Below, piece by piece: positions 4,126 to 50,100 of a stretch of DNA of 64,000 nucleotides. The stretch spans positions 744,001 through 808,000 of the forward strand of contig NW_026782078.1 in assembly GCF_031769215.1 (NCBI RefSeq). The letters run 5' to 3'. The translations under genes and the position numbers were made by a program. This DNA is from Ylistrum balloti. Its lineage: Eukaryota. A model generated the notes under the pieces. It was not told the DNA's origin, did not search any database, and saw only the letters and a list, made by a program, of their open reading frames with translations. Each line of letters opens with the position of its first letter. Position 1 is the first letter of the stretch.

Positions 4126-7100
4126 ATGCTCGTGAAAACATCTCTCCATCTCGTGGTGCTGGCTGGTTTGGCCCTCTCAGTGGTATCCAGCCATATTGTT
4201 AAGGGAAAGGGAAACAATGACGACCAGCCTGGACAATCTAGACACGACGGGAAACGGGCCATGGACAATATGTACAAAGGCAAGTCGAGAATTATACCTG
4301 ATAAACAGTATATAATATTTGAAATTGTGAAAAACAACCTTGAATTTGCAACTGGAGTCTTTTTTCATTTGTTAGTAATTGGTATTAGCATTAAGTTGAG
4401 AACTAAAGTTTTCTTTATAAATGCTTAGTATTTTCATTCGATTTTATTTAAAGAAAATATTAGTTTTTTCCTAAAAAAAAATAGCGAAAGACACATAATA
4501 AAGCATATCGTATCATGGATATCGCAAATGTAATTATACTCCAAAGTCGGTATCGTAACACCGCCAATATTTGGTTATTAACATTATTTTGACGATACAA
4601 TGTATTTGACATCACAAGAATTATGACTATGATTTACAACCAAACCATGATATAGATAAAATGTTGTAATTTCTTAAATGTATACAAAATGTGCAGGTAT
4701 GATGGAGTCTTTTAAGACAAGTTTTGTTCCCGGATCCAAGAAGGACGACGGTAATGGTAATGGTGGTGACGCTTCCCCTAGTGATTGGAAGAATATGATA
4801 CCGGGTTTCGCGAAAGGTTTTATTCCTGATAGTGCAGAGGTATGTACAATATGGGTAGAGTTCTTTACAGATTTAGCACAGGTACGTAATGCAAGGCTAT
4901 ATAAATGTACTGGGATTGTAGAGTTACGCACGGTGAGGAATCGGTGTCTTTATGTTGTAGTTGTAGAGGTACGTAAGTTAAGGCTATATAAATGTACTGG
5001 GATTGTAGAGTTACGCACGGTGAGGAATCGGTGTCTTTATGTTGTAGTTGTAGAGGTACGTAATGCAAGGCTATATAAATGTACTGGGATTGTAGAGTTA
5101 CGCACGGTGAGGAATCGGTGTCTTTATGTTGTAGTTGTAGAGGTACGTAATGCAAGGCTATATAAATATCCTGGGATTGTAGAGTTACGGAAGTTGAGAA
5201 ATCGGTGTCTTTATGTTGTAGTTGTAAAGGTACGTAATGCAAGGCTATATAAATGTACTGGGATTGTAGAGTTACGGAAGTTGAGGAATCGGTGTCTTTA
5301 TGTTGTAGTTGTAGAGGTACGTAATGCAAGGCTATATAAATGTACTGGGATTGTAGAGTTACGCACGGTGAGGAATCGGTGTCTTTATGTTGTAGTTGTA
5401 GAGGTACGTAATGCAAGGCTATATAAATGTACTGGGATTGTAGAGTTACGGAAGTTGAGGAATCGGGGTCTTTATGTTGTAGTTGTAGAGGTACGTAATG
5501 CAAGGCTATATAAATGTACTGGGATTGTAGAGTTACGCACGGTGAGGAATCGGTGTCTTTATGTTGTAGTTGTAGAGGTACGTAATGCATGGCTATATAA
5601 ATGTACTGGGATTGTAGAGTTACGGAAGTTGAGGAATCGGGGTCTTTATGTTGTAGTTGTAGAGGTACGTAATGCAAGGCTATATAAATGTACTGGGATT
5701 GTAGAGTTACGCACGGTGAGGAATCGGTGTCTTTATGTTGTAGTTGTAGAGGTACGTAATGCAAGGCTATATAAATGTACTGGGATTGTAGAGTTACGCA
5801 CGGTGAGGAATCGGTGTCTTTATGTTGTAGTTGTAGAGGTACGTAATGCAAGGCTATATAAATGTACTGGGATTGTAGAGTTACGGAAGTTGAGAAATCA
5901 GTGCCCTTATATAGGTAAGGATATATCAATGTAAAGATTGATATTGTGTTTTGTATCTAAACAAATCATTTCTGATGCTACCTAGATAAGTGTCTATGGT
6001 ATATTGCTTGTTTTTATCATTATTTCTTTGCTGGGGTATGTAATATACGTAATTTTATGATAGTGAACATATTTCCTGTTTAAGATTGAGATAATGGGTT
6101 AAAATATAATAACATGAACGTTGAATGAAAATTGCGGAAATGTTTTCAAAATGAAAATGAGGCTGACACCATATATATTTCCCGTTTCTATTTTATTGAC
6201 GAATTAGAATTTAATGATTAATAATTTTATAAAGGAAAGTAACAAATTCTGATCTGGTTCGTTCTAGTTTGATGTAATATAAGCATGTTTTTGCTGTACG
6301 AGTTGATAGTTAATTATTCATACTTCATATAAAAGATGTATAAGTGTTTTGTGTTTTCACCAGGATGGTACAGATAACAGCACTGTCAGTGAGGACGCTG
6401 TTACAGATTCTTCTGCCACAAACTCAACTTCAATGGGCATCGAGGGATCGTTCAAGGTCAACGCTGCCCTCAAAGATGACAAATCCACTGCAGACGAAAC
6501 AATGACGTCACAAGATGGCGAGTCAGTCGATACCACCGCGCTACCGGAAGTTCTGTCAACTGACGACAATGTTCCGTCGGAATATGGACTTCTTACTGGT
6601 GAGAATGACCTAGCGAATATCAATACACAGTCAAGCGAAACAGGAGCAATGGAAACTCCAACAGATTTGTCTGGCACAAATGAGGAACAAGATGGTGACA
6701 TGACACAATTAGAAAACGATTTAGCGGAAACAACAGATGAAGACCTTAATCCTCAGGGAGACACTGGCACACAGTTAGATGATACAGAAACAGATTTGAA
6801 AGAAAAGGAGCCGGACACAGATGCAAAAAAGGTATATACCTAAGAATTAAGGCATTCATTATGTTGTTAAAATATTTGCTGATTTTTTTTGTAGTGATCA
6901 AGACAGGGCACTACCTAGATGACGTCACGATAATTATCACGTGATGTTCAGGAAATATTAACTGTTCAGGATCACATTGTTTGTCTACGTTATAATGATT
7001 TGTATTGTTTATGTTGAAAGTTATTGAATTGACTAAGAACGAACAATACTCTTCACTTGTATGATGTATATGTAATTAATTATTATTATTAACTGTCAGT

Positions 7101-7405
7101 TACCAGAGCGAAAAAAAAATTCATGTAAAAATATTGAAGAATTTCAGTTTCGCAGCCGATTAGAATTATTAGAATCATCAGCTCGAAATGACGACCCCAA
7201 TATGATTCTTGTGAAGATATTCTGTGTTATTGTTAGATTTCTACGTAAGCTATATAATTACCACTTTTTCTATGCGTTATTGGACATGCTAACCGAGCAT
7301 ATATAGTCTATGTTTCTAAAGATGGCTATGAGTGGTAAGGCGTCCCTCAAGCACGATGAGAAGCCGGTCACTGATGTAGAAGAAAAGAAGGAAACTACCA
7401 TTTAG
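4126..7405 (+). CDS. Cluster gene 1: secreted acidic low-complexity protein, 282 aa, 4 exons (4126-4279, 4697-4839, 6364-6831, 7322-7405)
   Basis: Signal-like MLVKTSLHLVVLAGLALSVVSS, then ...HDGKR-AMDNMYK. Intron 1 has a GC-AG donor (AAAG|gcaagt). Exon 2 reads G-MMESFKTSFVPGSKK...WKNMIPGFAKGFIPDSAE, exon 3 is D/E/T-rich, exon 4 reads MAMSGKASLKHDEKPVTDVEEKKETTI*. Phases 1,0,0 are consistent and the total of 849 nt is divisible by 3. AATAAA at 7422-7427; TATAAAA at 4069-4075. Exons 1-2 are clearly homologous to gene 2. Confidence 0.8.
4882..5910. repeat. 87-bp minisatellite, ~12 copies, at the start of gene 1 intron 2
   Basis: Unit gtacgtaatgcaaggctatataaatgtactgggattgtagagttacgcacggtgaggaatcggtgtctttatgttgtagttgtagag. 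Confidence 0.95.
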
Positions 7406-12777: not shown

Positions 12778-14499
12778 ATGGCCAGGAAGGTAGACATATC
12801 ATTGCTATTTGTCTTCGTTCTATTGTTATACTTTCCCCAACTTTCGAACGGATCTGATGATGAGCAGACCAAACACCATGACAAGCGAGCTATGGGTGGC
12901 ATGTTTAAAGGTAATACTAACGAAATTCAAAAAAACTTTTATCCTAAACTCCGACTTACATAATTTCTTATTGAAGAAATCCTCTGAAATCGGCAATCTT
13001 AGTTTTTTTAAAGTGGGAGGACAACCCAAAGCATAATTAATACAATATCTGTTCACTATTTGTCGATCAGTAAACTGTGAAAAAGAGAGGAATACTTTGA
13101 TAAAAACTTGAGATCATTAAGCGTCAATGTGATTGGTTTAGCCTATTTGTTGTTTGGTGGCTACATTAAGGAGTTTTTATACATAGTACTTACACTGTAG
13201 TTTATTTGATGTTTGTTGTAAAAGTAGAGGACAGTTATTAATGATTTAATAAACGAACGATTATATCTGTGATTTGCTATCAATGTGAAGGAATGTAACC
13301 AATACCTTTCTATGTATCTGCAGACATCTTGAAATCTATTAAAACCAACTTCGTCCCGGGCAGTAAGAGTAAGAATCAGAAAGGAGGCGACGGAGGAGAC
13401 GGCAATGCCGGGGGATCGTCCAGTGGCTCCTGGAAAAACATGATACCTGACATAGCTAAGGCGTTTATACCAGACGGAGACCAGGTATAGTGAACATATT
13501 TCTATCACATCAATCGACAATGAGTAACACAAGTGTCAAAATATTGTAGGAGCTTCATCTTTCGGCTGGAGGGCAAATCGTTATGGCATACACATAGTTA
13601 CAATAATTTTAGATATTTTCTTCTTCAAAATCTACGTATAAATCACTATGATTAAACATTTAGATAACTTAGCTATATAACGTAAGCATCACTGGTAACA
13701 CTTGTTCATTTGGAATACTATCTTTGCGGTACAGGATAACAGCACCTCGACAGAAGACATGCAGGATAACGATTCCAGCTCTAACGTCACAGAGGTAGAT
13801 CCACAGGCCACTGAAGTCAATGCAGGAGTAACAGAGAACATGGGACAAGATACAAAAGTGAACAAACAGGATAGCGGGACCCAAGACGACATATCAGAAG
13901 ATGATTATGATACACAGGCAAGTGGCAAGACAGATGATAAACATGATTCAAAAGCGGACAATGGTTCAGGCGAAAAGCAAGACAAAACAACTGAGAAACA
14001 GAATGCGAAAGTTAATGAAGGAATAACTGAAAATATGGGCCCCAATGTAGATTCGAATATGATGGTCAATGAAACAGGTGATAATATGACGCAACATGAA
14101 TCAATTACCCAGCTACCGACAGGTGTGCACGATACGGCGTTAAACGCTGTTCATGACAATGATAAGGCAGCAGCACTGTCGTGGGAAGATGAATCACAGG
14201 AAGCAGAACAAGAAAAGGAAGAATCAGAAAAGCAGAAAAGTAACGACGATCTGAAAAAGACCGAGGAAGCCGAAGTAAAAGTTAATGCCGGTGTTACTGA
14301 AAATCTGGGTAATGACAATGTCAACCCAAAGCCAGCTAAATCTGGCTTATCTGACAACGACCATGATGTCAACTCCAACACAACAGTTTCCACAGGAAAT
14401 GCACTTATGTTTGAACAAAGCCAACCTTTGTCATGGGAAAGCGAATCACCGGAGGTCCTAGAGGATGAAATAGAAAAAGAACGTCAAACAAGACGATAG
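12778..14499 (+). CDS. Cluster gene 2: secreted acidic low-complexity protein, 352 aa, 3 coding exons (12778-12910, 13324-13484, 13735-14499)
   Basis: Signal-like MARKVDISLLFVFVLLLYFPQLSNG, then SDDEQTKHHDKR-AMGGMFK|D-ILKSIKTNFVPGSK...WKNMIPDIAKAFIPDGDQ|DNST... GT-AG sites with phases 1,0; total 1059 nt. A GTAAGT donor follows the stop immediately, and a further exon begins at 14897. Confidence 0.8.
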
Positions 14500-20189: not shown

Positions 20190-23100
20190 ATGCACGACTG
20201 GTACATCTGTTTGCTGGTTAGGCTGTTCATTCTACAGAGGGGTATTATACCCGTAGTTTGTGGTCCCTACACGGGGTACAGAGGGACTAATGGAGGTTCT
20301 TTCCAGGACGTATTATTTGGTGAGTGTTGTCTTTTCTACCAAGTAAATGGCAAGTTCGTTATTGTTGTTCCCGTCAACGGTTTTGTTTGAGATATAGTAG
20401 AGAATATATCTATTTTTTGTTATTTTTGTCTAATTAACGATATCAGTCATAATTCTATATATTTGATCGTCACAATTTTTAAGCTATAAATAAAAATGTA
20501 TATTTCTGTCAGCGTGTACAGCGTATACTGTATAACATTGAATGTTCAGGTAAAGCTAAATGAGACATCCGATTGAAGTATTATGTGTATAGTTATGTGA
20601 CGAGAATGAAATTTACACTCGATATGACAGGATTAAAACCACGAATAAAAATATCCACGAAAATGGTATGATGTATACCATGGCATTGCTATAACTAAAG
20701 TAACATATCAGCACAGATTCTACAGAAATTTTAAAATTTACAAAAACTTCAACATTTAAATATGAAAAAATATACACTATCCAACAAGCAATAATTAATA
20801 TAAAGCCTAATCTTTGCTGTTTATGGTTTTATAAACGAAAGTAATCACGTGGTAAGCGCGCCGTCCTTTTAATATGTTCATATCCAAAGGTTCATGCGAT
20901 TTTTCTCACTTGTATTTTCTCGTGTTTTCCACGCTCTTGTCGTACCGTCGTGTCTTATGACTAAAACATGTGCGATGTAAAAGTATTGTTATTTATTTAT
21001 AACTTAATCAGAATGTGTCACTGGTATGTTTTGTACCAGTCATCAGTTTTCTTTGTCATTTTTTGTAACAATCCTTGTATATATGTTTATTTATTTTGTA
21101 TTTTTATAAAGAAAATTTGTATTGATATGAACGTGTACTTTCATTAAGGAGTATTAGGTATAGTGTTGGTCCAAACAAAGCTGAAATCGATAGGACTGTA
21201 ATATACAACTTGTTATTTATGATTGATGGTAAATGAAAAAAGTTAAGTTTTTTTCATCAAAAGAGTTGGAATAAAAAAAATTCCAAAAATTATTTTTTAA
21301 ACGGAATTCGGAATTTTTACTTCCAGTACCAACACTTATCCTTATTCATCCCTTTTAAGCTCTTTAAAAGTGTAGTAAAAGCTAACGGCTAATATCAATA
21401 ATATTGATCACTCATGTTTACCCGGATGGAAGAGCACGAGAGTTCCTACTAAGGGAGGAAACCGCAGTACCTGAGGAAAACCCACAATGTCGGGCAAGTG
21501 AACCCCATACTAAATCACTGTTTATGAAACATTTGTTATTTGATATATCCAAGGAATGATATGGTCTCTCCACGATGTATAAACTAATTACTTTGATATC
21601 CAATAGTTAGTCGGTCTATGACGCCAAACCTTGTTATTGTAGGTGTCCCAATCGGCATGAAACACAGCCCATCAATCGTGGTACATGACTTAAATGATTC
21701 CGATGGTTCTGACGGTTCAGACGGCTCCGACGGCTCAGATCGTTCCGATTCATCGTTGTCGTCATCGTCGTCGTCATCGTCGTCCAGTGAATCAAATGAA
21801 GACGAAAGGGACGATGCACAAACAAATGGACGTGGAAATGATGATAGGCAATACAATGACAGAAACAGTGATGAAGATAGACGAGATGACGACAGTCGAA
21901 ATAGAAACAACGACGATGAAAATAGCAAGGAATTGCAGGCAGTGAAAGGTGACGAGAAAGGAAAAAACATGAATGAATATAAACTACAACAAATTTACAA
22001 TAATAAAAATGAACACGATAGCGAGGAGAAATCAGAAGATGTTGGCGACATCAAGAAAGCAAAACTAGACAATGCGGCGATTGTCCACGCTGTAACCAAA
22101 TCTGGATCCATGGATGGTGTTGCTGGTGAGACGGGAGGGGCTTCTCTGCCTTCTGTTAAAGATGGGCCTGAAACTGTTCTACCAGGAGAAGCAGACGGCA
22201 AATCGAGTAGTGATATTGATGAAAGTAGATCTAGAGGAGAAGACGACAGCAATGAAAGCAGGCCCCGAGGAGAGGATGATGGTCGCCCAAGAGGTGAAAA
22301 TACATCAGGTGGCAAGAAACAGTGGCCGAAACTTGTACCCGACATGTTCAAAAGTCTCGTACCCGAGGCGGTAAGAGAGATCAATATTTTTATTAATCCT
22401 TATCATTGGAGGACTTTAAAAGACATTTTAGAAATAAGATATCAGTAATAGATAGGTATTTCCATGATATAGAAAAGGCACGATGCCAAATGTATTTTAA
22501 CTTTCATAAAAAATAAAATGCTGAATGTCACATTTCTATATAACAGAAGAAAAACAACACCAAGCACACTATGACCGCAGAAGGAAAGAAAAACAACACA
22601 AGGGGACAGGAAACCGTCAGCAAAAGTAACCATGGATGGCCATACTTTGTACCTGAAGTATTTAAACCGCTTATACCAGACACGGTAGGTGACGACCATA
22701 CTTAGTACCGGAAGTATCTAAACCGCTTATACCAGACACGGTAGGTGACGGTCATACTTTGTACCGGAAGTATTCAAACTTCTCATACCAGACACGGTAG
22801 GTGACGGCCATACTGTACCGGAAGTATTTAAACCGCTCATACCACATACGGTAGGTGACGGCCATACTTTGTACCGGAAGTATTTAAACCTCTCATACCA
22901 CATACGGTAGGTGACGGCCATACTGTACCGGAAGTATTTAAACCTCTCATACCAGACACGGTAGGTGACAGCCATACTTTGTACCGGAAGTATTTAAACC
23001 GCTAATGCAAGACATGGTAGGTGTCTATCTTAATTTATACCGGAAGTATTTAAACCGCTCATACAAGACACGGTAAGTGATGGTCATACTTTATACCGGA

Positions 23101-26570: not shown

Positions 26571-29500
26571 ATGATTCCCAGATACAGTCTGATAATACTT
26601 ATTTTAGTTCTCTTTGCTGTAGCAGATAATGCTTCTGGGAAGTCGCTCGTTGTCAAACAAAGTACGAACGACAACGATAGCGACAACGATAACGACAACG
26701 ATAGCGACAACGATAGCGACAACAACAATGATGACGACAGTAAATTTATTAACATCATAAAGGGTGAGTTTTATAAAGTAAGATTTAAACGATAGCAAGG
26801 ATTTAAACTTCATGTCGTTTATCTCCATTATCAGTTCTATTATATGACGAAATCATTCATTTCCTGAATTTTTTCTTATGATAAATCATTGTATGATTTC
26901 GTTCACCTTTCTTCATTTGTCAGGGTTATTCTCTATTACATTTCCTCCTGTGTTAGGGTTATTCTCTATTACATTTCCTCCTGTGTTAGGGTTATTCTCT
27001 ATTACATTTCCTCCTGTGTCAGGGTTATTCTCTATTACATTTCCTCCTGTGTTAGGGTTATTCTCTATTACATTTCCTCCTGTGTCAGGGTTATTCTCTA
27101 TTACATTTCCTCCTGTGTCAGGGTTATTCTCTATTACATTTCCTCCTGTGTTAGGGTTATTCCCTATTACATTTCGTCCTGTGTCAGGGTTATTCTCTAT
27201 TACATTTCCTCCTGTGTCAGGGTTATTCTCTATTACATTTCCTCCTGTGTCAGGGTTATTCTCAATTACATTTCCTCCTGTGTCAGGGTTATTCTCTATT
27301 ACATTTCCTCCTGTGTCAGGGTTATTCTCTATTACATTTCCTCCTGTGTCAGGGTTATTCTCTATTACATTTCCTCCTGTGTCAGGGTTATTCTCTATTA
27401 CATTTCCTCCTGTGTCAGGGTTATTCTCTATTACATTTCCTCCTGTGTCAGGGTTATTCTCTATTACATTTCCTCCTGTGTCAGGGTTATTCTCTATTAC
27501 ATTTCCTCCTGTGTCAGGGTTATTCTCTATTACATTTCGTCCTGTGTCAGGGTTATTCTCTATTACATTTCGTCCTGTGTCAGGGTTATTCTCTATTACA
27601 TTTCCTCCTGTGTCAGGGTTATTCTCTATTACATTTCCTCCTGTGTCAGGGTTATTCTCTATTACATTTCGTCCTGTGTTACAGTCCTGTGTCAGGGTTA
27701 GGTTATTCTCTATTACATTTCCTCCTGTGTCAGGGTTATTCTCTATTACATTTCCTCCTGTGTCAGGGTTATTCTCTATTACATTTCCTCCTGTGTCAGA
27801 GTTATTCTCTATTATATTTCCTCCTGTGTCAGGGTTATTCTCTATTACATTTCCTCCAGTGTCAGGGTTATTCTCTATTATATTTCCTCCTGTAGGGTTA
27901 TTCTCTATTACATTTCCTCCTGTGTCAGGGTTATTCTCTATTACATTTCCTCCTGTGTCAGGGTTATTCTCTATTACATTTCCTCCTGTGTCAGGGTTAT
28001 TCTCTATTACATTTCGTCCTGTGTCAGGGTTATCCTCTATTACATTTCGTCCTGTGTTAAGGTTATTCTCTATTACATTTCCTCCTGTGTCAGGGTTATT
28101 CTCTATTACATTTCCTCCTGTGTCAGGGTTATTCTCTATTACATTTCCTCCTGTGTCAGGGTTATTCTCTATTACATTTCCTCCTGTGTCAGGGTTATTC
28201 TCTATTACATTTCCTCCTGTGTCAGGGTTATTCTCTATTAGATTTCCTCCTGTGTCAGGGTTATTCTCTATTACATTTCCTCCTGTGTCAGGGTTATTCT
28301 CTATTACATTTCCTCCTGTGTCAGGGTTATTCTCTATTACATTTCCTCCTGTGTCAGGGTTATTCTCTATTACATTTCCTCCTGTGTCAGGGTTATTCTC
28401 TATTACATTTCCTCCTGTGTCAGGGTTATTCTCTATTACATTTCCTCCTGTGTCAGGGTTATTCTCTATTATATTTCGTCGTGTCAGGGTTATTCTCTAT
28501 TACATTTCCTCCTGTGTCAGGGTTATTCTCTATTACATTTCCTCCTGTGTCAGGGTTATTCTCTATTACATTTCCTCCTGTGTCAGGGTTATCCTCTATT
28601 ACATTTCGTCCTGTGTTAAGGTTATTCTCTATTACATTTCCTCCTATGTCAGGGCTATTTTCTATTACATTTCCTCCTGTGTCAGGGTTATTCGTTATGA
28701 CGGCAGAAAACCTTTATGACAGAAAAGGTTACATAATTCTCACCATTAAGCAAAGAGGTTTTGCTTTTCAGATAGTTTTATATTGAAAATCTTTTACAAC
28801 TTGATAGACCCACTCTAACATAAATATGTACAACTTTCACTCTATAGAACATCCGGTGTGGTACTAGTTGCTGTACCATTACAGTGAAACAAGAGGACAA
28901 TGAAGGACAGCGTCTTTGTGTTGTAGCAATTAATTCCTATAAATAAATCAACGCTAAAAGAATCAGTAAAGAAAATACCGGCATGTCTACAAAAAGTTAA
29001 ACACAAAATGCTGGCATGTCTAAAGAAAGTCAAACTCAAAATACCGGCATATCTACACAAAAACAAACTCAAAATACCGGCATGTCTACAGAAAGTCAAA
29101 CTCAAAATACCGGCATGTCTACAGAAAGTCAAACTCAAAATACCGGCATGTCTACAGAAAGTCAAACTCAAAATACCGGCATGTCTACAGAAAGTCAAAC
29201 TCAAAATACCGACATTTCTACAGAAAGTCAAACTCAAAATACCGACATGTCTACAGAAAGTCAAACTCAAAATACCGGCATGTCCACAGAAAGTCAAATT
29301 CAAAATACCGGCATGTCTACACAAAAACAAACTCAAAATACCGGCATGTCTACAGAAAGTCAAACTCAATTTCAATAAAACTAGGACAAAACCGGACTCA
29401 TGAAAAAGTACAAGGAAATAAGACCAAGTGTTTCTCAATGTAAATCTTGGTCAATTCCAGTAAGTAATGTCGCGTTCCCAAATGAGGACAATGGTAACAA

Positions 29501-32500
29501 CAAGGAAATCATCAAGCAACATCATCGAACACGCCCAACTCTATACCGCAAACATAAACAGAACATTTCTCAATGAGATCATTATGACGACAATAAAGCC
29601 TGTGTCGTGAATATGTCAGTTGCCGACACATAGCACGAATATCGTGATATCGGGAAAATAAATTGAAAACCGAATCAAATGTGACTTCAAATATCATAAG
29701 TTGTGATACACCCGCAATCCAACATTTTTATGACTTCTGTTGTAACCAATATCATTTAATAACATTACACAGGTCCAGTTGCCTTAAAGAATTAAAATAT
29801 ACTGTGCGTTATATCCTCTATATACACCAAATGATATTAAGGCGCCAACATTAAGTATCAATCTTTATATGCAAATAAGCTGACAACTAACATCAGCTCC
29901 TCACAAAATGTTTATGTCGACGAGCTAAGTGGTATAATTATAGAAAAGGCGGGAAAACATAATGTCATATTCATGTTGATCTGGCAGTTAAATGTCCCAT
30001 TCAATGTCTTCTCATACCGTCTTAAATTACGATGACGTCATCCTATTTCGTTGCAGAGGCCATGGAAGATATAAGCGCTGAGATTGACGAGTACATCGAC
30101 TTAGTACCGGAAACGGATAAAAAACAAAGTATTGAGGTACTAGTATACAGTATTAACGGGCGATTGTATAGTCTCGGATAAAAGAACACTATTAATTATT
30201 GATAAGGTTTATAGACAATTATAGCGGGGTCAGGGGTCAACAGGTTAATTGGAACAATCGATGGAAATGACAAAGATCAAGGGTGGTGAGATAGACCAGG
30301 AAAAAGCAATGGAAATGAAGGTCAGTGGTTAGAGAAACCTGGAACAAACAATACCGGTATGTTAGACAATAATGTAGGTCAGGGGTCAAATAGATCAGGA
30401 ACTAAAAATAGAGGTATGTCAGTCTAATAGACAATGATGTAGGTCAGGGGTCAGGTAGATTGGGGACAAACAATAGATGTATATAAGTGTTATAGACAAT
30501 GATAGGAGTCAGGGGTCAAATAGATCAGGAACTAAAAATAGAGATATATAAGTTTGATAGAAAATGATAGAGGTCAGGGGTCAAATAGATCTGAACAAAC
30601 AATAGATGCAAGTAAGTTTGATAGATCAGATGTAATGTATAGAGAAAACAAATCACTGCTGGAAATGTGGTCGACAAGCAATGGGAAAGGATACTTCTAG
30701 TGACAAGGATGAAGAATTAAGTATATACAAGAGGTATAGAGACTATAAAGTGTTGGAAAAAGAAACTACTTGCATCCGGAGTTGTTCAAAGATTGGCTAG
30801 ACTTAAACCATTGTCTGGGCTAGAATAAACCAGTAGTTATTGAAAAATCTTAACTGATGCCACTGAAAAAAAAACTTCCATAACAAAATTTACTTGAAAA
30901 TAGCAAATTGACATGTATCAACAGATCAACGGCTGTGCAAAAAAACTCCCAATATATCTCTTAATTTTTTAATACCTTATTGTTATTGTAATGACACTAT
31001 TTAACAATGCACTAAGCCGATGTTCTCTGGCATTTATTCCAAGGTGGAGACAAAAAATGGGTATGATGTTGAGACAAAGAAAACAGTCATCAACGGAAGT
31101 GTTGGTGATAAGGACGCAAAATTATACATAGAGCAGGCCAAAGTACTCGGCAAGGTAAAGTCTGACGTATTAAGCTTATCTCCGTGTAACTTTTGTCAAT
31201 ATAATTGTGTCATACTAGAAAAGTACATGAAACTCACAAGGGTTTTCGTGAAGGATTTGACAGAGTGGTATCCCCATATAGTGATTTAAATGGACAAAAT
31301 CTAATCATCCCGATATATTGATTAAAAAAATCCTGGTATACTAATTAATATATAAATTGAAATGGCGAAGATCTACTCATATCAGCAAACAAAACGTGGA
31401 ATAGGTGGCGAAGCCATTAGCCATTGTGTTGGCATAAACCAGTGGTAGTTATAGTCTCACTCAACATAGCAACAACTGTTGTAATGGGGACGTCTAGTAC
31501 TGTTGTAATGGGACGTCTGGTTCTGTTGTAATGGGGACGTCTAGTTCTGTTGTAATGGGGACGTCTAGTTCTGTTGTAATAGGACGTCAAGTTCTGTTGT
31601 AATGGGACGTCTAGTTCTCTTGTAATGGGACGTCTAGTTCTCTTGTAATGGGGACGTCTAGTTCTGTTATAATGGGTCGTCTAGTTCTGTTGTAATGTGA
31701 CATCTAGTTCTGTAGTAATGGGACGTCTAATTCTGTTGTTATGGGACGTCTAGTTCTGTTGTAATGGGACGTCTAGTTCTCTTGTAATGGGACGTCTAGT
31801 TCTCTTGTAATGGCGACGTCTAGTTCTGTTGTAATGTGACGTCTAGTTCTGTTGTAATGTGATGTCTAGTTCTATTGTAATGTGACGTCTAGTTCTGTTG
31901 TAATGGGACGTCTGGTTCTGTTGTAATGGGGACGTCTAGTTCTGTTGTAATGGGGACGTCTAGTTCTGTTGTAATGTGATGTCTAGTTCTGTTGTGATGG
32001 GACATCATGTTCTGTTGTAATTGGGACGTCTAGTTCTGTTGTAATGTGACGTCTAGTTCTGTTGTGATGGGACGTCTAGTTCTGTTGTAATGGGACGTCT
32101 AGTTCTGTTGTAATAGGACGTCTAGTTCTGTTGTGATGTGACGTCTAGTTCTGTTGTAATGGGACGTCTAGTTCTGTTGTAATGTGACGTCTAGTTCTGT
32201 TGTGATGGGACGTCTAGTTCTGTTGTAATATGGACGTCTAGTTCTGTTGTAATAGGACGTCTAGTTCTGTTGTAATGTGATGTCTAGTTCTGTTGTAATG
32301 GGGACGTCTAGTTCTGTTGTAATGTGATGTCTAGTTCTGTTGTAATGGGACGTCTAGTTCTGTTGTAATGTGATGTCTAGTTCTGTTGTAATGTGACGTC
32401 TAGTTCTGTTGTAATATGGACGTCTAGTTCTGTTGTAATGTGACGTCTAGTTCTGTTGTAATGTGATGTCTAGTTCTGTTGTAATGTGACGTCTAGTTCT

Positions 32501-35757: not shown

Positions 35758-38254
35758 ATGTGTGACACAAAAATGATGTTTCAAAAATACATCATTCTGA
35801 TATGTATTCAAGTATTCGTAGTTCAGATAGTACTGTCACCAGTATCCTACGGCAAAACTGCGCCCTCTAACGGCACAGAGAATGAGGACGTGCCCAGAAA
35901 TATCAGCAGCGATCCAGGAAGAAAAAGTACAGTGGGGAAAGCACTTGCAGATCTCATCAAAGGTAACGTGTCCGGGAATTTGTGGGGAAGGAACTTGTAG
36001 ATCTCATCAAACGTAACGTGTCCGGGAATTTGTGGGGAAGGAACTTGTAGATCTCATCAAAGGTAACGTGTCCGGGAATTTGTGGGGAAGGAACTTGTAG
36101 ATCTCATCAAAGGTAACGTGTCCGGGAATTTGTGGGGAAGGAACTTGTAGATCTCGTCAAAGGTAACGTGTCCGGGAATTTGTGGGGAAGGAACTTGTAG
36201 ATCTCATCAAAGGTAACGTGTCCGGGAATTTGTGGGGAAGGAACTTGTAGATCTCATCAAAGGTAACGTGTCCGGGAATTTGTGGGGAAGGAACTTGTAG
36301 ATCTCATCAATGGTAATGTGTCCGGGAATTTGTGGGGAAGGAACTTGTAGATCTCATCAAATGTAACGTGTCCGAGAATTTGTGGGGAAGGAACTTGTAG
36401 ATCTCATCAAAGGTAACGTGTCTGGGAATTTGTGGGGAAGGAACTTGTAGATCTCATCAAATGTAACGTGTCCGGGAATTTGTGGGGAAGGAACTTGTAG
36501 ATCTCATCAAACGAAACGTGTGCAGGAATTTGTGGGGAAGGAACTTGTAGATCTCATCAAAGGTAACGTGTCCGGGAATTTGTGGGGAAGGAACTTGTAG
36601 ATCTCATCAAAGGTAACGTGTGCAGGAATTTGTTGGGAAGGAACTTGTAGATCTCATCAAAGGTAACGTGTCCGGGAATTTGTGGGGAAGGAACTTGTAG
36701 ATCTCATCAAAGGTAACGTGTCCGGGAATTTGTGGGGAAGGAACTTGTAGATCTCATCAAAGGTTACGCGTGCAGGAATCTGTTGGGAAGGAGCTTGCAG
36801 ATAACCTCAAAGGTAATGTCTTCAGAAATTTGGATGGGGGTGGGGGCGGAAATCGCAAATCTGAAGAAAGAAAGAATGATCTGTAAATGTACCTGTATTT
36901 TCTGATAGAATTACCTTAATCACTCTGAAGCAGAGCATGTATATAAATGTGACAGGCCGCCCGAATACAAGCTGACGTTTATAACATCAGGTATATCTAA
37001 AGTGTATGTATTATCATCGGAAATTTATTACAACTAAGTTATTTCATCTGAATTCGAATCCTACATAGACAAGTATAAAACGGATTTAATCTAACACATA
37101 GTGAAGAATAGTTCAATGCAGCAAATGTTCGGAAATTTAAAGAATTATCATATCTTAGGCAGGGTTTGATATTCGACGCCATGATCTCATTCGGAAAACA
37201 TGTTTGTTTGTTTGTTTTTATTATTCTTAATCTGCAGGTACTTATTCATGAATAGGTGTGTATTTCTTTCTTTCGTTCAAATTCTGATATCATTTTGATC
37301 GGTTCTGCATTTGAGTACAGGGTTTAGACAATATTTTTCTTTAGTGACTATCATTGATATTTTATGTCATGTTCCAGCTATCTTCAGACTGATAAGGGTT
37401 GAGATTAAGTCAACCGAAGATCTTATACCTGACTTTGAAGATGACCCGAACCGTGACCCCATGTCACTACCTCTAATAACGGTCAGTTTATCTTCAAACA
37501 ATTGCATGTCGCCATTCCTTCTAGTAACGATCAGCATACATACCACATGACCTGTTACTTACTCTACAACGGTATCTCCCATGTGACCACGTGTTACTTC
37601 CTCTGATAACTTTTCCTCTCTCGTGATCTTATCATGTAACTCCCTCTTTTAACGGCCATTGTATCTCCAATATATTTCCAACATGATATAATTTGACTTC
37701 CTCGGTTAGCATATTTCCCACGTGACCCATTGTTAGCTTTCAATATATACAGACACTCCCTCTACAATAATAATGAATCCGCTTAATAAATACTTTGTTT
37801 TTTTTAGATTGAGAACGTGAACGGGACACTTGTAGCCACCTCCAGGGACGTCAACATATACGACGCCATAAGAGATGTAAGACTTCTGTTTCCGTCACTC
37901 TCGCTCACAAAACTCGCCTCTTTACTCAGATTACTAATTCGATTTCTCCGTAAACTGTTGTAGATTCTGTATACCAATTAAAAAGCACACATTTATACAT
38001 GTATGGCGCAGTTTTTCTTCTTTCTGTGTATCACATCAGTGTCAAAGTACTGTGTGAATGAAATAAATCATAAGACTTTAATCATAAACAAAACCCTGCT
38101 AATTCCTGTACTTCCTATCTGTGAACAGCAACAACGACGTCAAAATAACAGCCACGAGGTGCACTATGTTTCCGGTCAGCAAGATGGCGGCATATCTGTT
38201 GAGGGGGCTGGTCTCAGCAAGGAAGGAATGGATTCAGGCGAGAATGAGCTCTGA
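35758..38254 (+). CDS. Cluster gene 5: secreted protein, ~167 aa, 4 exons (35758-35962, 37378-37481, 37808-37876, 38129-38254)
   Basis: Hydrophobic MFQKYIILICIQVFVVQIVLSPVSYG, then ...PGRK-STVGKALADLIK|A-IFRLIRVEIKSTEDLIPDFEDD...LIT|IENVNGTLVATSRDVNIYDAIRD|QQRRQ...ENEL*. Canonical GT-AG sites, phases 1,0,0; total 504 nt. The exon 3 start resembles gene 4 exon 3 ([VI]E-x-x-NG-x-x-V-x-T). The start could be at 35758, 35773 or 35776. Confidence 0.72.
35951..36820. repeat. 50-bp minisatellite, ~17 copies, made of the gene 5 exon 1 end plus 5' splice site
   Basis: Unit atctcatcaaaggtaacgtgtccgggaatttgtggggaaggaacttgtag. Confidence 0.95.
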
Positions 38255-39084
38255 AAATAGAAGACTTATTATAGAGAAATTGTATATCATAACTTCCAAA
38301 ATTAAAAATGGTATCCGCAAAAGGTCAGAGTCCAAGAAGAATTATCACTTTTTTAGAACAAAGTGATATAGTTTCATAACTCTATGTTACAATTTTGCGA
38401 TTACATATCGCATTTAGCCAATGGAGTGTCTGGTGAAAAAGTGTACGATGTTTGTGACCTTCATTTAGGAATGACTTATTTAACGGCAACTTAGCGTAAT
38501 GTTATCACCATGTCACTAAAGCTACGGTATAGTCACCTGTGTGAGGACTGTACTTATGGTGTATACCTACACTAATGTCATTATGTATCCTAAGTTTGTA
38601 AGTTGGTGGAATTGAATTCAACTAGAATAATATCGCTAGTTTTTATTTAGTTTCCTTTATTAAATAAATGGGATTAAAATCACACGTTACATGATTTTAC
38701 AAATTTAAAATCACATGAATCTGATTGTTTTGATTTAGATTGTTGATTTGAAATTTCTATCATTATTCATACGTAATGTGGTATATACATATAGCTTTGT
38801 AATTCCTACATTAGCAGTGTGTGTTGAGACTTTGACTTAAATTTGAGACATAATTTGACGACTGTTAAAACAAGATGTTTACAGTAAAAGCTATTGTTTC
38901 TGTTTTTGTTTGTTTTGATGTGTTTTTTTTTTATTTTTCCTGTAATTTACATTTAGTTTAATATTGGTCCGTGTAAATTATAAATCAGGCAAATAGACCA
39001 AGCATCTCTGTAATCGACTCTAAGTGTTCATGTCAATAAAAAAAAAACCAGCAGAAATGTTTGTTTTGTTATCAGTTCATATTA

Positions 39085-42000: not shown

Positions 42001-42270
42001 GTCTGAAGTAAGGTTACCACATCTAAAGTAAGGTTACGTAAGGTTACCACATCTAAAGTAAGGTCACCACATCTAAAGTAAGGTTACCACATCTGAAGTC
42101 TGAAGTAAGGTTACCACATCTGAAGTAAGAATACCACATCTGAAGTAAGGTTACCACATCTAAAGTAAGGTTACCACATCACCACATCTGAAGTAAGGTT
42201 ACCACATCTGAAGTAAGGTCACCACATCTAAAGTAAGGTTACCACATCTGAAGTAAGGATACCACATCTG
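39085..42270. repeat. 20-bp minisatellite, ~155 copies
   Basis: Unit gtaaggttaccacatctgaa, with a ...ctaaa variant. Confidence 0.95.
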
Positions 42271-44125
42271 GGACTATATTGTATGGTGATTTTACACTCC
42301 TGAAGTGTGGTAGTTGTATGGAGACACTCTGTACTCCTGAAGTGTGACTATAGTTGTATGGTGATACTCTACACTCCTGAAGTGGAACTATAGTTGTATG
42401 GTGATACTCTACACTCCTGAAGTGTGGTTATAGTTGTATGGAGACACTCTGTACTTCTGAAGTGTGACTATAGTTGTATGGTGATACTCTACACTCCTGA
42501 AGTGGGACTATAGTTGTATGGTGATACTCTACACTCCTGAAGTGGGACTATATTTGTATGGAGACACTCTGTACTCCTGAAGTGTGACTATAGTTGTATG
42601 GTGATACTCTACACTCCTGAAGTGGGACTATAGTTGTATGAAGACACTCTGTACTCCTGAAGTGTGGCTGTATCTGTATTGTGATACTCTGTACTCCTGA
42701 AGTGGGACTATAGTTGTATGGAGACACTCTGTACTTCTGAAGTGTGGCTATAGTTGTATGGTGATACTCTACACTCCTGAAGTGGGACTATAGTTGTATG
42801 GAGATACTCTACACTCCTGAAGTGGGACTATAGTTGTATGGAGATACTCTACACTCCTGAAGTGGGACTATAGTTGTATGAAGACACTCTGTACTCCTGA
42901 AGTGTGACTATAGTTGTATGGTGATACTCTACACTCCTGAAGTGGAACTATAGTTGTATGGTGATACTCTACACTCCTGAAGTGGGACTATAGTTGTATG
43001 GTGATACTCTACACTCCTGAAGTGTGACTATAGTTGTATGGTGATACTCTACACTCCTGAAGTGTGGCTATAGTTGTATGGAGACACTCTGTACTCCTGA
43101 AGTGTGACTATAGTTGTATGGTGATACTCTACACTCCTGAAGTGGACTATAGTTGTATGGTGATACTCTACACTCCTGAAGTGTGGCTATAGTTGTATGG
43201 AGACACTCTGTACTCCTGAAGTGTGACTATAGTTGTATGGTGATACTCTACACTCCTGAAGTGGAACTATAGTTGTATGGTGATACTCTACACTCCTGAA
43301 GTGTGGCTATAGTTGTATGGAGACACTCTGTACTTCTGAAGTGTGACTATAGTTGTATGGTGATACTCTACACTCCTGAAGTGGGACTATAGTTGTATGG
43401 TGATACTCTACACTCCTGAAGTGTGGCTATAGTTGTATGGAGACACTCTGTACTCCTGAAGTGTGACTATAGTTGTATGGTGATACTCTACACTCCTGAA
43501 GTGGGACTATAGTTGTATGGTGATACTCTACACTCCTGAAGTGGGACTATAGTTGTATGGAGACACTCTGTACTTCTGAAGTGTGGCTATAGTTGTATGG
43601 TGATATTCTACACTCCTGAAGTGGGACTATATTTGTATGGAGACACTCTGTACTCCTGAAGAATGGTTATAGTTGTATGGAGACACTCTGTACTCCTGAA
43701 GTGTGACTATAGTTGTATGGTGATACTCTACACTCCTGAAGTGGGACTATAGTTGTATGATGATACTCTACACTCCTGAAGTGTGGCTATAGTTGTATGG
43801 AGACACTCTGTACTCCTGAAGTGTGACTATAGTTGTATGGTGATACTCTACACTCCTGAAGTGGGACTATAGTTGTATGGTGATATTCTACACTCCTGAA
43901 GTGTGGCTATAGTTGTATGGAGACACTCTGTACTCCTGAAGTGTGACTATAGTTGTATGGTGATACTCTACACTCCAGAAGTGGGACTATAGTTGTATGG
44001 TGATACTCTACACTCCTGAAGTGTTGCTATAGTTGTATGGAGACACTTCGTACTCCTGAAGTGTGACTATAGTTGTATGGTGATACTCTGTACTCCTGAA
44101 GTGTGGCAATAGTTGTATGACAATA
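42271..44125. repeat. 40-bp minisatellite, ~46 copies, two interspersed variants
   Basis: Unit tatagttgtatggtgatactctacactcctgaagtgggac, alternating with a ...ggagacactctgtactcc... variant. Confidence 0.95.
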
Positions 44126-47153: not shown

Positions 47154-50100
47154 ATGTTTCTGTCCAGAAAAGGCTTGTGGTTCTCCTTCAGTGTTTTACT
47201 TATATATACATCTATCGTGTGTGTGAATTCTACCAAACAAGACAATGACGCGATAGGAAATGCATTCGGAAGCCTGTTTAAAGGTATAACCGGGATTTTC
47301 TGTTTCGAGTAGTATAATGTTTTTCGAAAACTTTGAAAAGATGTGCATTATGAAATTTGATTCTTTCATACCATTATTTTTAATGTGGTTTGATTTAGAT
47401 ATATTTTAATAGCGTTGTGGGGATTCTTTATCTGCGATAATGTACGCGTATGTTTCCTGTTTCTGTATATCCTGGTTTTCTATCGTCATCTTTTGTCCCG
47501 GTGTGTTGACGTGGTAAAATCTTGGTGATTTTTTCAGTCGTATGGTCCTTTTTGTTATCTGTCAATGCTCCGATAGTTTGCTCTATGTCATCATGTATGG
47601 GTTGTCCCTGTTGTACTGTATGACCGATTATTTTCACGGGATGATGGTCAAGTTACATTAATAAAGTGTGAATTAACGAGACAATTGTATCTAAGATGTT
47701 CTTATCGGACCAGATCGTGAAATGTTCATTAAGAAATATATATAATTTTTAAAGAAAATCGTAAAAGCTTTCACCCGTGAAAATTACAAGTTGTACGATA
47801 TATAGGTTAAGAAATACATTAGTATTACACACGTATAAAAGTTTATTTCTATAGTAGCTGCATGTTACCAGAGTAATTATCAGTATGTGTTATTGGTGTG
47901 TTATTCCGATCACCCTACACGCTGATGTGACGATGTTTATGTTTGTGTCATTCTAAATTTGACGTTGCCATGTTGTTTAAATGGTTCCTTTAGGAACACT
48001 CATACCATCCTGGTATTCTTGTGATTTTTCTTTAAGCAATACTCAACGTCGTAAGGTCACAATTCGAAGCAACAAAGGATTTTGTTCCTGGACTCGATAC
48101 GGCTGGAGGATCCACAAATCTCACGACTCAGGTATGTTGTCTCATCTTACGTCATCAAAAGTTACCAAAACATTTGTAATCATGTTTAGCTAACAGATGG
48201 ACCGGTGAGCTTACTCCATGGCGCAGCGTTCGTCGTCGGCGTATCTAAATTTTACTAAATGTCGCTACTTGTCATGAACGACAGAACAGATTGTAATCAT
48301 AACTGGTATGATGCACTCTTCGCGGAAGAAGAACGAAGTTTGTATAAATATTGGTTTTCAGCCCCCAGTGGTGTGATGGACGGGTCCCGAAAGGGAAAGT
48401 TTTGCAAACTCCTACTCCTCCTGAATGAATGGATGAAAATTGCCCAAAACTGGTATGAAGCATTCCTGGATGAAGAGGAATCAATCTTGTATAACTGGTG
48501 GGTCTCGACCTCTTGGGGCTGCAAGGGCGGAGCTCAATATAGAAAATAATGCAGATTCTTCGAAATTCTACTCCTCTTGTAGCAATGATTTAATTTTGTG
48601 CAAATTTGGTCTGAAGTGCTCTTGAGTGAAGCGGAATAAGTTCTGTACAACCTGTGGATACTGGCCACCTGGAGCGGGAGGGGTTGGGCAAAACTGGAGA
48701 ATTCTAAGTTCACAAAAATCCTCTTCCATTCAAGGATATTGTCCAAGTGTTGTCTGAAGCAATTTTCATGAATAGTGAATCTGACTTCAGTTTCAGCACA
48801 AGGCCAGGTAATTTTTGTTATCACCATTATTTATGTTTTTTCCTTTGATTACACAAACAGCGTATTACATACGTATAACTATTTAGCTGTGTTATTTACT
48901 TTTCTAGAATGCTGGAGTAAATGACATTGGGGATCAGACGAATCATGACACCAAGGTAAGTTGCAAATTTAATACTTAAGTAATGCCAAGAATAAGGAGG
49001 GGAAAAGGTCAAACGAGGAAAATTTGGGAAATAGACTGAACCTTAAAGACCTTATCAGAGCAATGATTGGGAAAGCCAAAATACTGGGACATGTTCACAA
49101 TGCAGCCGAGTAGGTAACCAGCAAGCACTCTAAAGGATATTATATAAGGAATATATTTCCCAGGAGTATGAGTGATTCACCAAGGATTAGGAGCAGGTTG
49201 TCAACTGTTATCATGGCTCGGCACATCATGCTGATATGGAAAGTGACTTGCATTTCAACTTCAATAACTTTCAACTAATACTCATAATTATATATATATC
49301 TTTATATAGGTAATCATGAATATTAGTTGAGAGGGTTTGACTGTATGAATTTATTCAAATACAAAGTCTGCAATCTATCATAATGTTTTATGGAGAGAAA
49401 ATACTATTTTTGTATAAGGCAAATTCATTAGTTGATTTTAATATATGCAGAAAAGTGGTATTAAGGGTATTATGTTTAGAAAATAATAATTAAATTGTGA
49501 TTCTCTCCTGGCAGGTTGGCATGAAGGTAGACATGAAATCGAAGAAAATCTTTTTCAATGACGATGTTAAGCATTCTACAGAGAGTCCATCTATCGACGA
49601 GGAAGCTCTGTCGCCTCCAACAGTCATGGGAGATCATGGAACCACCGATGAATCCCAGGACAGTGCAACTAATGTGCCTGGTCCAGAATACCAGGAAAGT
49701 CATCAGGATCAAACCTCAGATCAGAGAACTGGGGACGAAAGTCAAATCGGTTCAACAACACAAAGCACACAGGATAACTACCAGTCATCAGATACTGGGG
49801 ATGCCTTCGGGAATAGTAAAATTCCGGATGTTTCTTTCTCGGGTGGGAAATCTTTGTCATCAAGCGACGGTCTCCCAGGCCAGGTACATGGACCGGATAA
49901 GTGGCCATTCCAGCCTGATGTTAAAGACATGTTAGGAGTTCTTGGAAAGGAAATAACTGAACCAGTCGAAGTGTTTGGAGGAAAGCATGAAATAGATCAA
50001 GCAGGGTTTGTTCTTGCAAACAACATGACCGAAATTTCCATGCCAACGAATGAGTCGTCACCCAGCCACACAGCCGTGGAATCCACAGATTCACCAAATA

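What the first reader, a model, noticed from the sequence alone, without database searches (positions are those of the whole stretch)
35917..37450. Conserved amphipathic helix plus [FL][VI]P motif split by the phase-1 intron, behind a dibasic site in three members
Seen, aligned without gaps across the junction: g4 KFINIIK-EAMEDISAEIDEYID-LVPE; g5 ALADLIK-AIFRLIRVEIKSTED-LIPD; g6 AFGSLFK-AILNVVRSQFEATKD-FVPG. Each has 15 residues from K to the motif. g1 AMDNMYK-GMMESFKTS-FVPG and g2 AMGGMFK-DILKSIKTN-FVPG have 9. Hydrophobic residues recur every 3-4 positions. The segment is preceded by KR in g1 (GKR, 4249-4257) and g2 (12883-12888) and by RK in g5 (35920-35925). Established: signal peptide + acidic spacer + dibasic site + amphipathic helix is the layout of many host-defence peptide precursors, and G-K-R can mark amidation. 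Inference: convertase processing exposes the helix. Because charge runs from cationic (g2, g5) to strongly anionic (g4), it may be a self-assembly or granule-sorting module, or a charge-complementary pairing code between paralogues, rather than a uniform antimicrobial peptide.
Basis: partly seen in the sequence, partly recalled or inferred. Interest (0 to 1): 0.72.

Follow-up and report, generated by a model that had tools for sequence, protein, structure and literature searches.

The report
Conserved helix in scallop secreted proteins
A tandem family of secreted, acidic, mostly disordered proteins found so far only in scallops keeps a strongly conserved amphipathic helix just behind the signal peptide, always cut by the same intron; the helix is real, but nothing shows that it is released as an antimicrobial or hormone-like peptide, and its function is still unknown.

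Summary
The window is from the scallop Ylistrum balloti. All quoted peptides, coordinates, splice sites and intron phases check out. The finding's gene g5 is RefSeq LOC132548048 (162 aa) and g1 is LOC132548047 (287 aa). I found two more members, so at least seven tandem paralogues share the same plan: signal peptide, spacer, amphipathic helix split by a phase-1 intron, a hydrophobic-hydrophobic-Pro cap, then a Cys-free acidic disordered tail.

The amphipathic periodicity beats shuffles (p <= 0.004 in four members, weaker in g1 and g2). AlphaFold predicts the helix at modest confidence. In g5 the helix block is invariant across three scallop genera (dN/dS about 0.03 at dS about 1).

- A basic site lies between signal peptide and helix in only four of seven members, at distances of 0 to 46 residues.
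- The helix net charge runs from -5 to +2.
- The helix is followed by 85-290 residues of tail and, except perhaps in g1, is not flanked for release.

The "15 residues" spacing is not kept in g4 orthologues.

No Pfam, PDB, literature or RNA evidence was found. My best reading is a paralogue-specific docking or self-association handle on acidic secreted proteins, with KR trimming as an accessory in g1 and g2. Function is unproven.

The parts
35773..35962 (+). g5 (LOC132548048) exon 1. It encodes the signal peptide (about residues 1-27), a spacer with two N-x-S/T sequons, RK at 35920-35925, and the first half of the helix (T53-K63, 35929-35961). It ends in phase 1.
35963..37377 (+). g5 intron 1 (GT-AG, phase 1, 1415 nt). 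It splits codon A64 in the middle of the helix.
35932..36816 (+). Array of 17.7 copies of a 50-bp unit. It starts inside exon 1 and repeats the exon end plus the GT donor (..ATCAAAG|GTAACG).
37378..37481 (+). g5 exon 2. It encodes the second half of the helix (I65-S75, 37380-37412), the cap motif LIPD (37422-37433), and the conserved stretch DPNRDPMSLP.
37808..37876 (+). g5 exon 3 (23 aa, predicted beta hairpin).
38129..38254 (+). g5 exon 4, with the invariant RR (residues 124-125) and the stop codon.
4126..4279 (+). g1 (LOC132548047) exon 1. It ends ..HDGKR AMDNMYK| in phase 1, with a GC donor at 4280.
4697..4839 (+). g1 exon 2: the rest of the helix, FVPG, then the second motif W-K-N-M-I-P-G-F-A-K-G-F-I-P-D.
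6364..7405 (+). g1 exon 3 (acidic, S/T-rich, 6364-6831) and exon 4 (7307-7405, conserved basic C-terminal helix).
12778..14499 (+). g2 (352 aa): exons 12778-12910 (..HHDKR AMGGMFK|), 13324-13484 and 13735-14499.
20190..20319 (+). g3 exon 1. It ends ..SFQDVLF| in phase 1. Exon 2 starts at 21643 with G-V-P and runs into a long Ser/Asp-rich acidic exon.
26571..26763 (+). g4 exon 1: signal peptide, N/D/S-rich acidic spacer, then ..SKFINIIK| in phase 1.
30057..30136 (+). g4 exon 2: an anionic helix half, then LVPE. The acceptor lies further in than in the other scallops.
47154..47283 (+). g6 exon 1. It ends ..NAFGSLFK| in phase 1, with no basic site.
48037..48131 (+). g6 exon 2: the helix half and FVPG.

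Best explanation
The cluster is a family of tandem paralogues, seen so far only in scallops (Pectinidae). Its products are secreted, Cys-free, acidic and largely disordered proteins.

Shown: each member carries, just behind the signal peptide and a variable spacer, one amphipathic alpha-helix. The helix is encoded across a conserved phase-1 intron and closed by a hydrophobic-hydrophobic-Pro cap.

Inferred: the helix is a sequence-specific protein-protein docking or self-association handle. It stays attached to the acidic, probably calcium-binding tail and is not released as a free peptide. Its hydrophobic face is shared by all paralogues. Its polar face differs between paralogues but is frozen within each orthologue group, which points to a specific partner for each paralogue.

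Inferred: the KR in g1 and g2 is most likely a proprotein-convertase site that trims a short N-terminal piece in the secretory pathway. This is an accessory of some members, not the defining feature. The RK in g5 and RR(RR) in g0 are less likely to work this way.

Where the handle acts is open. It could act in cargo condensation or sorting in the trans-Golgi and granules, or in assembly of an extracellular or shell matrix.
For: Family and gene plan.
- Seven same-strand neighbours share one exon plan and a phase-1 junction after a hydrophobic-hydrophobic-K ending; in g3 the ending is L-F, with no K.

Helix.
- The periodicity is significant against shuffles.
- AlphaFold places helices at g5 53-75 and g1 39-60, with pLDDT about 56-66, in otherwise disordered models with mean pLDDT 46-48.

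Constraint.
- g5 residues G49-L79 are invariant in three genera.
- g5 block 49-96 has dN 0.028 against dS about 1.0. Signal peptide plus spacer has dN/dS 0.2-0.58.
- g1 residues 30-99 are almost invariant in four genera, while its tail is about 60-70% identical.
- The g6 and g2 modules are likewise kept.
- In g4, the segment-level periodicity survives a 17-20-residue length change.

Tails.
- pI 4.0-4.6, Asp+Glu 18-35%, no Cys.
- The Mizuhopecten g4 copies carry long poly-Asp runs.

Precedent.
- N-terminal amphipathic helices of proCART, secretogranin II and prosomatostatin are necessary for, or sufficient for, sorting and self-aggregation of secretory cargo (PMC3602189).
Against: - There is no expression, proteomic or peptide evidence of any kind. 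No RNA run was offered, and the one run laid is DNA of another individual.
- Oligomerisation could not be modelled with the tools at hand.
- Sequence statistics do not link g1/g2 with g4-g6.
- The near-invariance of polar residues, and of the stretch in front of KR in g1, would also fit a receptor-binding ligand or hormone.
- AlphaFold confidence for the helices is only moderate, and the alignments are shallow (3-4 sequences).
- Absence outside scallops rests on limited searches: a word index, plus one phmmer run with g5 exon 1 only.
Confidence: 0.45

Rival explanations
1. Prohormone or secreted-ligand reading. The proteins are cut at the conserved basic sites, and the products act on specific receptors. 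Candidate products are the possibly amidated peptide in front of GKR in g1, the 21-residue piece between KR and KK in g1, and the 72-residue piece between RK and RR in g5. The helix would be the receptor-binding part.
For: - The basic sites are kept in all orthologues seen.
- The Gly before KR in g1 is invariant in four genera.
- Polar residues of the module are invariant, as in bioactive peptides.
- KR without Arg at P4 suits neuroendocrine-type convertases (established knowledge).
Against: - g3, g4 and g6 have no basic site before the helix.
- The Gly before KR is absent in g2.
- There are only 2-4 dibasic pairs per protein.
- The long acidic, poly-Asp and Ser/Asp-rich tails and the seven-fold tandem diversification are unusual for neuropeptide genes.
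- None of six module peptide strings (from g1, g2, g5 and g6) occurs in the text or the held supplements of the Yesso scallop neuropeptide catalogue of 63 genes (PMC5996578).
Confidence: 0.2
2. Generic sorting-helix reading. The helix is a granin-like signal for regulated secretion. Only its amphipathicity matters, and it has no specific partner.
For: - The proteins are acidic, disordered, Cys-free cargo with an N-terminal amphipathic helix and some dibasic sites.
- There is precedent in proCART, secretogranin II and prosomatostatin (PMC3602189).
Against: - A generic signal should tolerate conservative change, yet 31 consecutive residues of g5, polar ones included, are invariant at dS about 1.
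- There is no match to granin families in Pfam.
Confidence: 0.15
3. Host-defence reading. Convertase cleavage frees a membrane-active amphipathic peptide.
For: - The order signal peptide, spacer, KR, amphipathic helix holds in g1 and g2.
- The hydrophobic moment reaches 0.5-0.7.
Against: - Net charge is -5 to +2, and no member is clearly cationic.
- The helix is not at the C-terminal end and, except perhaps in g1, has no cleavage site behind it.
- The spacer of g5 carries conserved glycosylation sequons.
- Strong purifying selection is the opposite of the diversifying pattern usual for antimicrobial peptides (the comparison rests on established knowledge).
Confidence: 0.05
4. Ordinary reading. 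The helix is simply the only foldable piece of otherwise disordered, lineage-specific secreted proteins, for instance a helix that packs on the rest of the chain. It has no separable role, and the basic sites are not used.
For: - No known domain, structure or paper was found.
- AlphaFold shows no tertiary contacts, but its confidence is low.
Against: - The helix block is the most constrained part of g5 and g1.
- The same plan has been kept through at least seven duplications and in four genera.
Confidence: 0.1

Closest known systems
N-terminal amphipathic sorting or aggregation helices of regulated-secretion cargo (proCART 24-37, secretogranin II 25-41, prosomatostatin N-terminus; PMC3602189)
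   Same: Both have a signal peptide followed closely by a 14-24-residue amphipathic helix with a leucine/isoleucine face. The cargo is acidic and largely unfolded, and dibasic sites lie nearby.
   Different: There is no sequence relation and no Pfam granin hit. The scallop helices are frozen in their polar residues too. There are seven tandem paralogues with very different tails. Storage in granules is not shown.
Amphibian-type host-defence peptide precursors (signal peptide, acidic spacer, KR, mature peptide)
   Same: The order of elements matches in g1 and g2, and the segment after KR is helical and amphipathic.
   Different: Here the helix is neutral to anionic. It is followed by 85-290 residues rather than being the C-terminal end. 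The basic site is missing in three of seven members. Evolution is conservative rather than diversifying.
Unusually acidic bivalve shell-matrix proteins (MSP-1/MSP-2 of the Yesso scallop, Aspein, Asprich; criteria quoted in PMC8217771)
   Same: Both are secreted, Asp/Glu/Ser-rich, low-complexity and lineage-restricted. Poly-Asp runs occur in the Mizuhopecten g4 copies. VWA-domain genes lie next door.
   Different: pI is 4.0-4.6, not below 3.5. No shell-proteome or mantle-expression evidence could be obtained. Homology was not tested, because no reference sequences were on hand.
Vertebrate SCPP gene cluster (secretory calcium-binding phosphoproteins), by analogy only and from my own knowledge
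   Same: Both are tandem clusters of fast-evolving secreted acidic disordered proteins. They share a conserved exon plan at the N-terminus while the tails diverge.
   Different: The lineages are unrelated. SCPP introns are phase 0 and the conserved piece is a phosphorylation motif, not an amphipathic helix.

Membership tests
Host-defence peptide precursor (amphibian type) | Signal peptide at the N-terminus | tested here: met
   All members have a hydrophobic N-terminus. AlphaFold places a helix at residues 3-21/22. No dedicated signal-peptide predictor was available.
Host-defence peptide precursor (amphibian type) | Dibasic cleavage site directly before the mature peptide in all members | tested here: not met
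   KR lies directly in front only in g1 and g2. RK lies four residues ahead in g5, and RRRR lies 46 residues ahead in g0. g3, g4 and g6 have none.
Host-defence peptide precursor (amphibian type) | Mature peptide is cationic and amphipathic | tested here: not met
   The segment is amphipathic, but its net charge is -5 to +2.
Host-defence peptide precursor (amphibian type) | Mature peptide is short and forms the C-terminal end of the precursor | tested here: not met
   The helix is followed by about 85 residues in g5, 225 in g1 and 295 in g2.
Neuropeptide / prohormone | Conserved peptides flanked by dibasic sites, with Gly for amidation | tested here: inconclusive
   GKR is invariant in g1 in four genera, and the g5 RK and RR are invariant. 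But there are only 2-4 dibasic pairs per protein, and none before the helix in three members.
Neuropeptide / prohormone | Listed among known scallop neuropeptide genes, or expressed in ganglia | tested here: not met
   None of six module peptide strings (from g1, g2, g5 and g6) is in the text or the held supplements of PMC5996578. Expression itself was not testable, because no RNA runs were offered.
Granins | Acidic, disordered secretory protein | tested here: met
   pI 4.0-4.6, Asp+Glu 18-35%, no Cys, mean pLDDT 46-48.
Granins | Sequence homology to chromogranin or secretogranin families | tested here: not met
   No Pfam family reaches its cut-off. There are no PDB relatives.
Granins | Storage in dense-core granules and stimulus-dependent release | not testable with these tools
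   This needs cell biology.
Unusually acidic shell-matrix proteins (Aspein/Asprich/MSP type) | Asp+Glu above 20% and theoretical pI below 3.5 (criteria as quoted in PMC8217771) | tested here: not met
   Asp+Glu is 18-35%, but pI is 4.0-4.6.
Unusually acidic shell-matrix proteins (Aspein/Asprich/MSP type) | Found in the shell matrix, or expressed in the mantle | not testable with these tools
   No supplements are held for the Pecten shell proteome paper. There are no hits in the held supplement of the biomineralization toolbox paper. No RNA runs were offered.

The most novel reading that the evidence does not exclude
The helices form a paralogue-specific recognition code. They share a hydrophobic core and have private, frozen polar faces. 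In this reading they assemble differently charged acidic tails into defined homo- or hetero-oligomers for packaging and for building the scallop's calcite matrix. It would be a modular 'handle plus tail' system that evolves by tandem duplication, by shifts of the splice acceptor and by insertions or deletions inside the helix.
Probability: 0.12. Interest if true: 0.6.

Novelty: new member of a known kind. Interest (0 to 1): 0.38.

Why it matters
If the helix proves to be a specific assembly or sorting handle, it would give a testable entry into how molluscs package and organise highly acidic, disordered secreted proteins. That question is open for shell formation and for regulated secretion in invertebrates, where granin-like proteins are barely known. 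As it stands, the result is a well-documented orphan gene family with one strongly constrained element and no functional data. It is useful for annotating scallop genomes but not surprising in kind.

Tried and rejected
- RNA evidence: the run search offered no RNA holder. The single run laid is DNA contigs of another individual, with differences only in introns.
- Word-index search with g5 exon 1 found nothing, because the true product (162 aa) exceeds the length filter. This was solved with phmmer and a second word search.
- Pfam on family proteins and long exons gave only sub-threshold noise.
- PDB profile searches were empty.
- ESM Atlas gave no usable feature hit, and the structure rows have TM below 0.45.
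- hhalign of g1 against g5 aligned only the signal peptides.
- Paper searches for LOC, XP and OWF identifiers and for the module peptides gave zero papers.
- The neuropeptide catalogue and the shell papers contain nothing on these genes.
- Look-ups for transcript contigs of orthologues returned only genome records.
- The 'charge-complementary pairing of g4 with g5' idea was considered but not adopted, because g5 is about neutral and multimer modelling was not available.
- An X-Pro-Gly hydroxylation site was considered for FVPG and MIPG and dropped, because LIPD, LVPE and FIPD do not fit it.

Full report
**Source and setting.** The window is AT-rich eukaryotic DNA. One third of it is minisatellite arrays. 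A word search with g1 exon 2 returned a 100% match to an uncharacterized protein of the scallop Ylistrum balloti (LOC132548047, 287 aa), with orthologues in Pecten maximus, Argopecten irradians and Mizuhopecten yessoensis. The encoding contig places the window at 744001-808000 of JAUZWB010000107.1.

**Checking the observation.** The stated coordinates of GKR, KR and RK are exact. In g1, g2, g4, g5 and g6, exon 1 ends AA(A/G) G| in phase 1, followed by GT (GC in g1). Exon 2 follows a YAG acceptor. The junctions are not just my reading:
- The RefSeq proteins of g1 (P0001) and g5 (P0009) contain exactly the joined sequences.
- I reproduced the annotated 352-aa product of g2.
- The full g5 gene has four exons (35773-35962, 37378-37481, 37808-37876, 38129-38254) and encodes 162 aa.

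**Two further members.** A gene 7 kb upstream of the window (g0, 162 aa, L001:2994-4496) ends exon 1 with ..DYSKFYK and opens exon 2 with D-IMENLKG-FLP. g3 ends exon 1 with ..SFQDVLF in phase 1 and opens exon 2 with G-V-P. The shared plan therefore holds for at least seven tandem genes, with 1, 8, 9, 9, 15, 15 and 15 residues between the junction and the Pro motif.

**Is the periodicity more than chance?** The helical hydrophobic moment at 100 degrees is 0.51-0.68 in g0, g4, g5 and g6, against 0.19-0.25 for 5000 shuffles each (p <= 0.004). The best angle is exactly 100 degrees. g1 and g2 are weaker (0.33-0.50, p 0.01-0.07, best at 90 degrees). In g1 and g5 this segment is the top-scoring 18-residue window of the whole protein. 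AlphaFold on shallow alignments predicts helices at g5 53-75 and g1 39-60 with pLDDT about 56-66. Otherwise the models are disordered (mean pLDDT 46-48), apart from a small hairpin and helix in g5 and a C-terminal helix in g1.

**Conservation.**
- In g5, residues G49-L79 are identical in Ylistrum, Pecten and Mizuhopecten. Codon comparison gives 19 synonymous against 3 non-synonymous differences for residues 49-96 (dS about 1.0, dN 0.028). Signal peptide plus spacer has dN/dS 0.2-0.58.
- In g1, residues 30-99 are nearly invariant in four genera, including the stretch in front of KR, while the tail is much freer.
- The g6 and g2 modules are likewise kept.
- Across paralogues, hydrophobic positions are shared but polar positions differ. 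Within each orthologue group the polar positions are frozen.

**Corrections to the observation.** In Mizuhopecten and Pecten, g4 exon 2 begins 17-20 codons further upstream (K|DVLGGLIGGL.. and ..|DVMKSIMDYL..). I could reproduce the annotated 176-aa Mizuhopecten product only with that acceptor and canonical junctions. There the region forms two separate amphipathic segments rather than one helix in register, and the motif reads KVP. So the gap-free '15 residues' shared by g4, g5 and g6 is partly a Ylistrum-specific coincidence created by an acceptor shift. Profile-profile comparison of g1 and g5 is not significant beyond the signal peptide. Common descent is inferred from position, strand, exon plan, phase and the short motifs.

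**The basic sites.** They are conserved where present: KR in g1 (four genera), KR in g2 (two), RK in g5 (three) and RRRR/HRR in g0 (two). They sit 0, 0, 4 and 46 residues before the helix and are absent in g3, g4 and g6. Mizuhopecten g4 has an RR that Ylistrum lacks. KR without Arg at P4 would suit PC1/PC2-type enzymes rather than furin, and RK is a rarely used pair (both from my own knowledge). Amidation signalled by GKR would affect the peptide in front of it, not the helix, and the Gly is missing in g2.

**What the proteins are.** The mature proteins are Cys-free and acidic (pI 4.0-4.6, Asp+Glu 18-35%), rich in Ser/Thr/Gly, and carry conserved N-glycosylation sequons. Mizuhopecten has three g4 copies with long poly-Asp runs. 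VWA-domain genes lie next door on the other strand. No Pfam family, solved structure, Atlas neighbour or paper was found. None of six module peptide strings (from g1, g2, g5 and g6) is in the Yesso scallop neuropeptide catalogue as held. No RNA run was available, and the one run laid is genomic DNA of another individual.

**Interpretation.** The helix is real and is the most constrained part of these proteins. It is not the mature end of a host-defence precursor, for three reasons:
- The charge is wrong.
- A long tail follows it.
- Selection is purifying.

A prohormone or ligand reading remains possible, mainly because polar residues and basic sites are frozen. Against it stand the missing sites in three members and the nature of the tails. 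My best reading (0.45) is a paralogue-specific docking or self-association handle on acidic secreted proteins, in the manner of the N-terminal amphipathic helices of proCART, secretogranin II and prosomatostatin (PMC3602189), with KR trimming in g1 and g2 as an accessory. Whether it acts in granule packaging or in an extracellular or shell matrix cannot be decided without expression and proteomic data.

**Novelty and score.** This is an orphan family, seen so far only in scallops, of a familiar general kind: tandem, fast-evolving, secreted acidic proteins with one conserved N-terminal element. It is of moderate interest. The recurrent arrays of exon end plus splice donor noted below may deserve their own follow-up.

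Noticed in passing
window 35932-36816; L002:10181-10944; L003:58440-62440: Minisatellites that repeat an exon end together with its 5' splice site recur at g5 in three scallops. Ylistrum intron 1 has a 50-bp unit x 17.7. Pecten intron 1 has a 20-bp unit x 37.8 (CTCATCAAAG|GTAACATGAT). Mizuhopecten intron 2 has an 88-bp unit x about 45 (..TTTATAACG|GTAAGT), while its intron 1 is only 431 nt. Most copies keep a good donor. In Ylistrum, use of a later copy would run into a stop after 12 codons. The cause and any effect (decoy donors, U1 binding, a mutational hotspot) are unknown.
   Followed up: partly
window 22638-23189 and 4880-5910: In g3, a 56-bp unit x 9.9 repeats a whole small exon end (..WPYFVPEVFKPLIPDT|gtaggt). 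In g1, an 87-bp unit x 11.9 starts 40 nt after the exon 2 donor, and its unit contains a donor-like GTAGAG|GTACGT that resembles the exon 2 end.
   Followed up: partly
window 4279-4285: g1 intron 1 is a GC-AG intron (AAAG|GCAAGT). This is confirmed by the RefSeq protein, which reads ..MYK-G-MMES.. across it.
   Followed up: yes
L001:2994-4496 (7 kb upstream of window position 1): A seventh family member, g0 (162 aa), has RRRR right after the signal peptide, the module ..DYSKFYK|DIMENLKGFLP, an acidic middle, and a Pro-less remnant of the second motif (DWASIFAGFSDKYM). It is conserved in Argopecten (L005:2873-4401).
   Followed up: partly
window 30057 versus L003:53774 and L002:5185: An acceptor shift in Ylistrum g4 removes 17-20 residues of the module that Mizuhopecten and Pecten keep. 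The old upstream sequence now contains a stop codon.
   Followed up: yes
L003:11930-55766: Mizuhopecten has three tandem g4 copies (268, 263 and 176 aa), two of them with poly-Asp runs of several dozen residues. The GenBank model KP79_PYT03192 (P0006) is a chimera of g4 and g5.
   Followed up: partly
window 4786-4839, 13431-13484, about 22330-22375, 22645-22690: A second motif, W-x-x-hydrophobic-[IV]-P-x-x-[AF]-K-x-hydrophobic-[IV]-P-[DE], sits at exon ends in g1 and g2 and twice in g3. It looks like a doubled copy of the K-x-x-hydrophobic-[VI]-P cap of the helix.
   Followed up: partly
window 7307-7405: The last exon of g1 encodes a conserved basic stretch (KK-SMFLK-x-AM-x-GKA..) that AlphaFold predicts as a helix (251-267, pLDDT about 67). 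It is a second conserved element at the other end of the acidic tail.
   Followed up: no
window 51042-54686, minus strand: Open frames here match the VWA domain (Pfam E 9e-15 and 4e-05). This is a neighbouring gene or genes of a type common among extracellular and shell-matrix proteins.
   Followed up: partly
window 39084-44119 and 60701-64000: There are very long minisatellite blocks: 20 bp x 155, 40 bp x 46, and 64 bp x more than 50. Arrays with TRF score of at least 200 cover 33% of the window.
   Followed up: no
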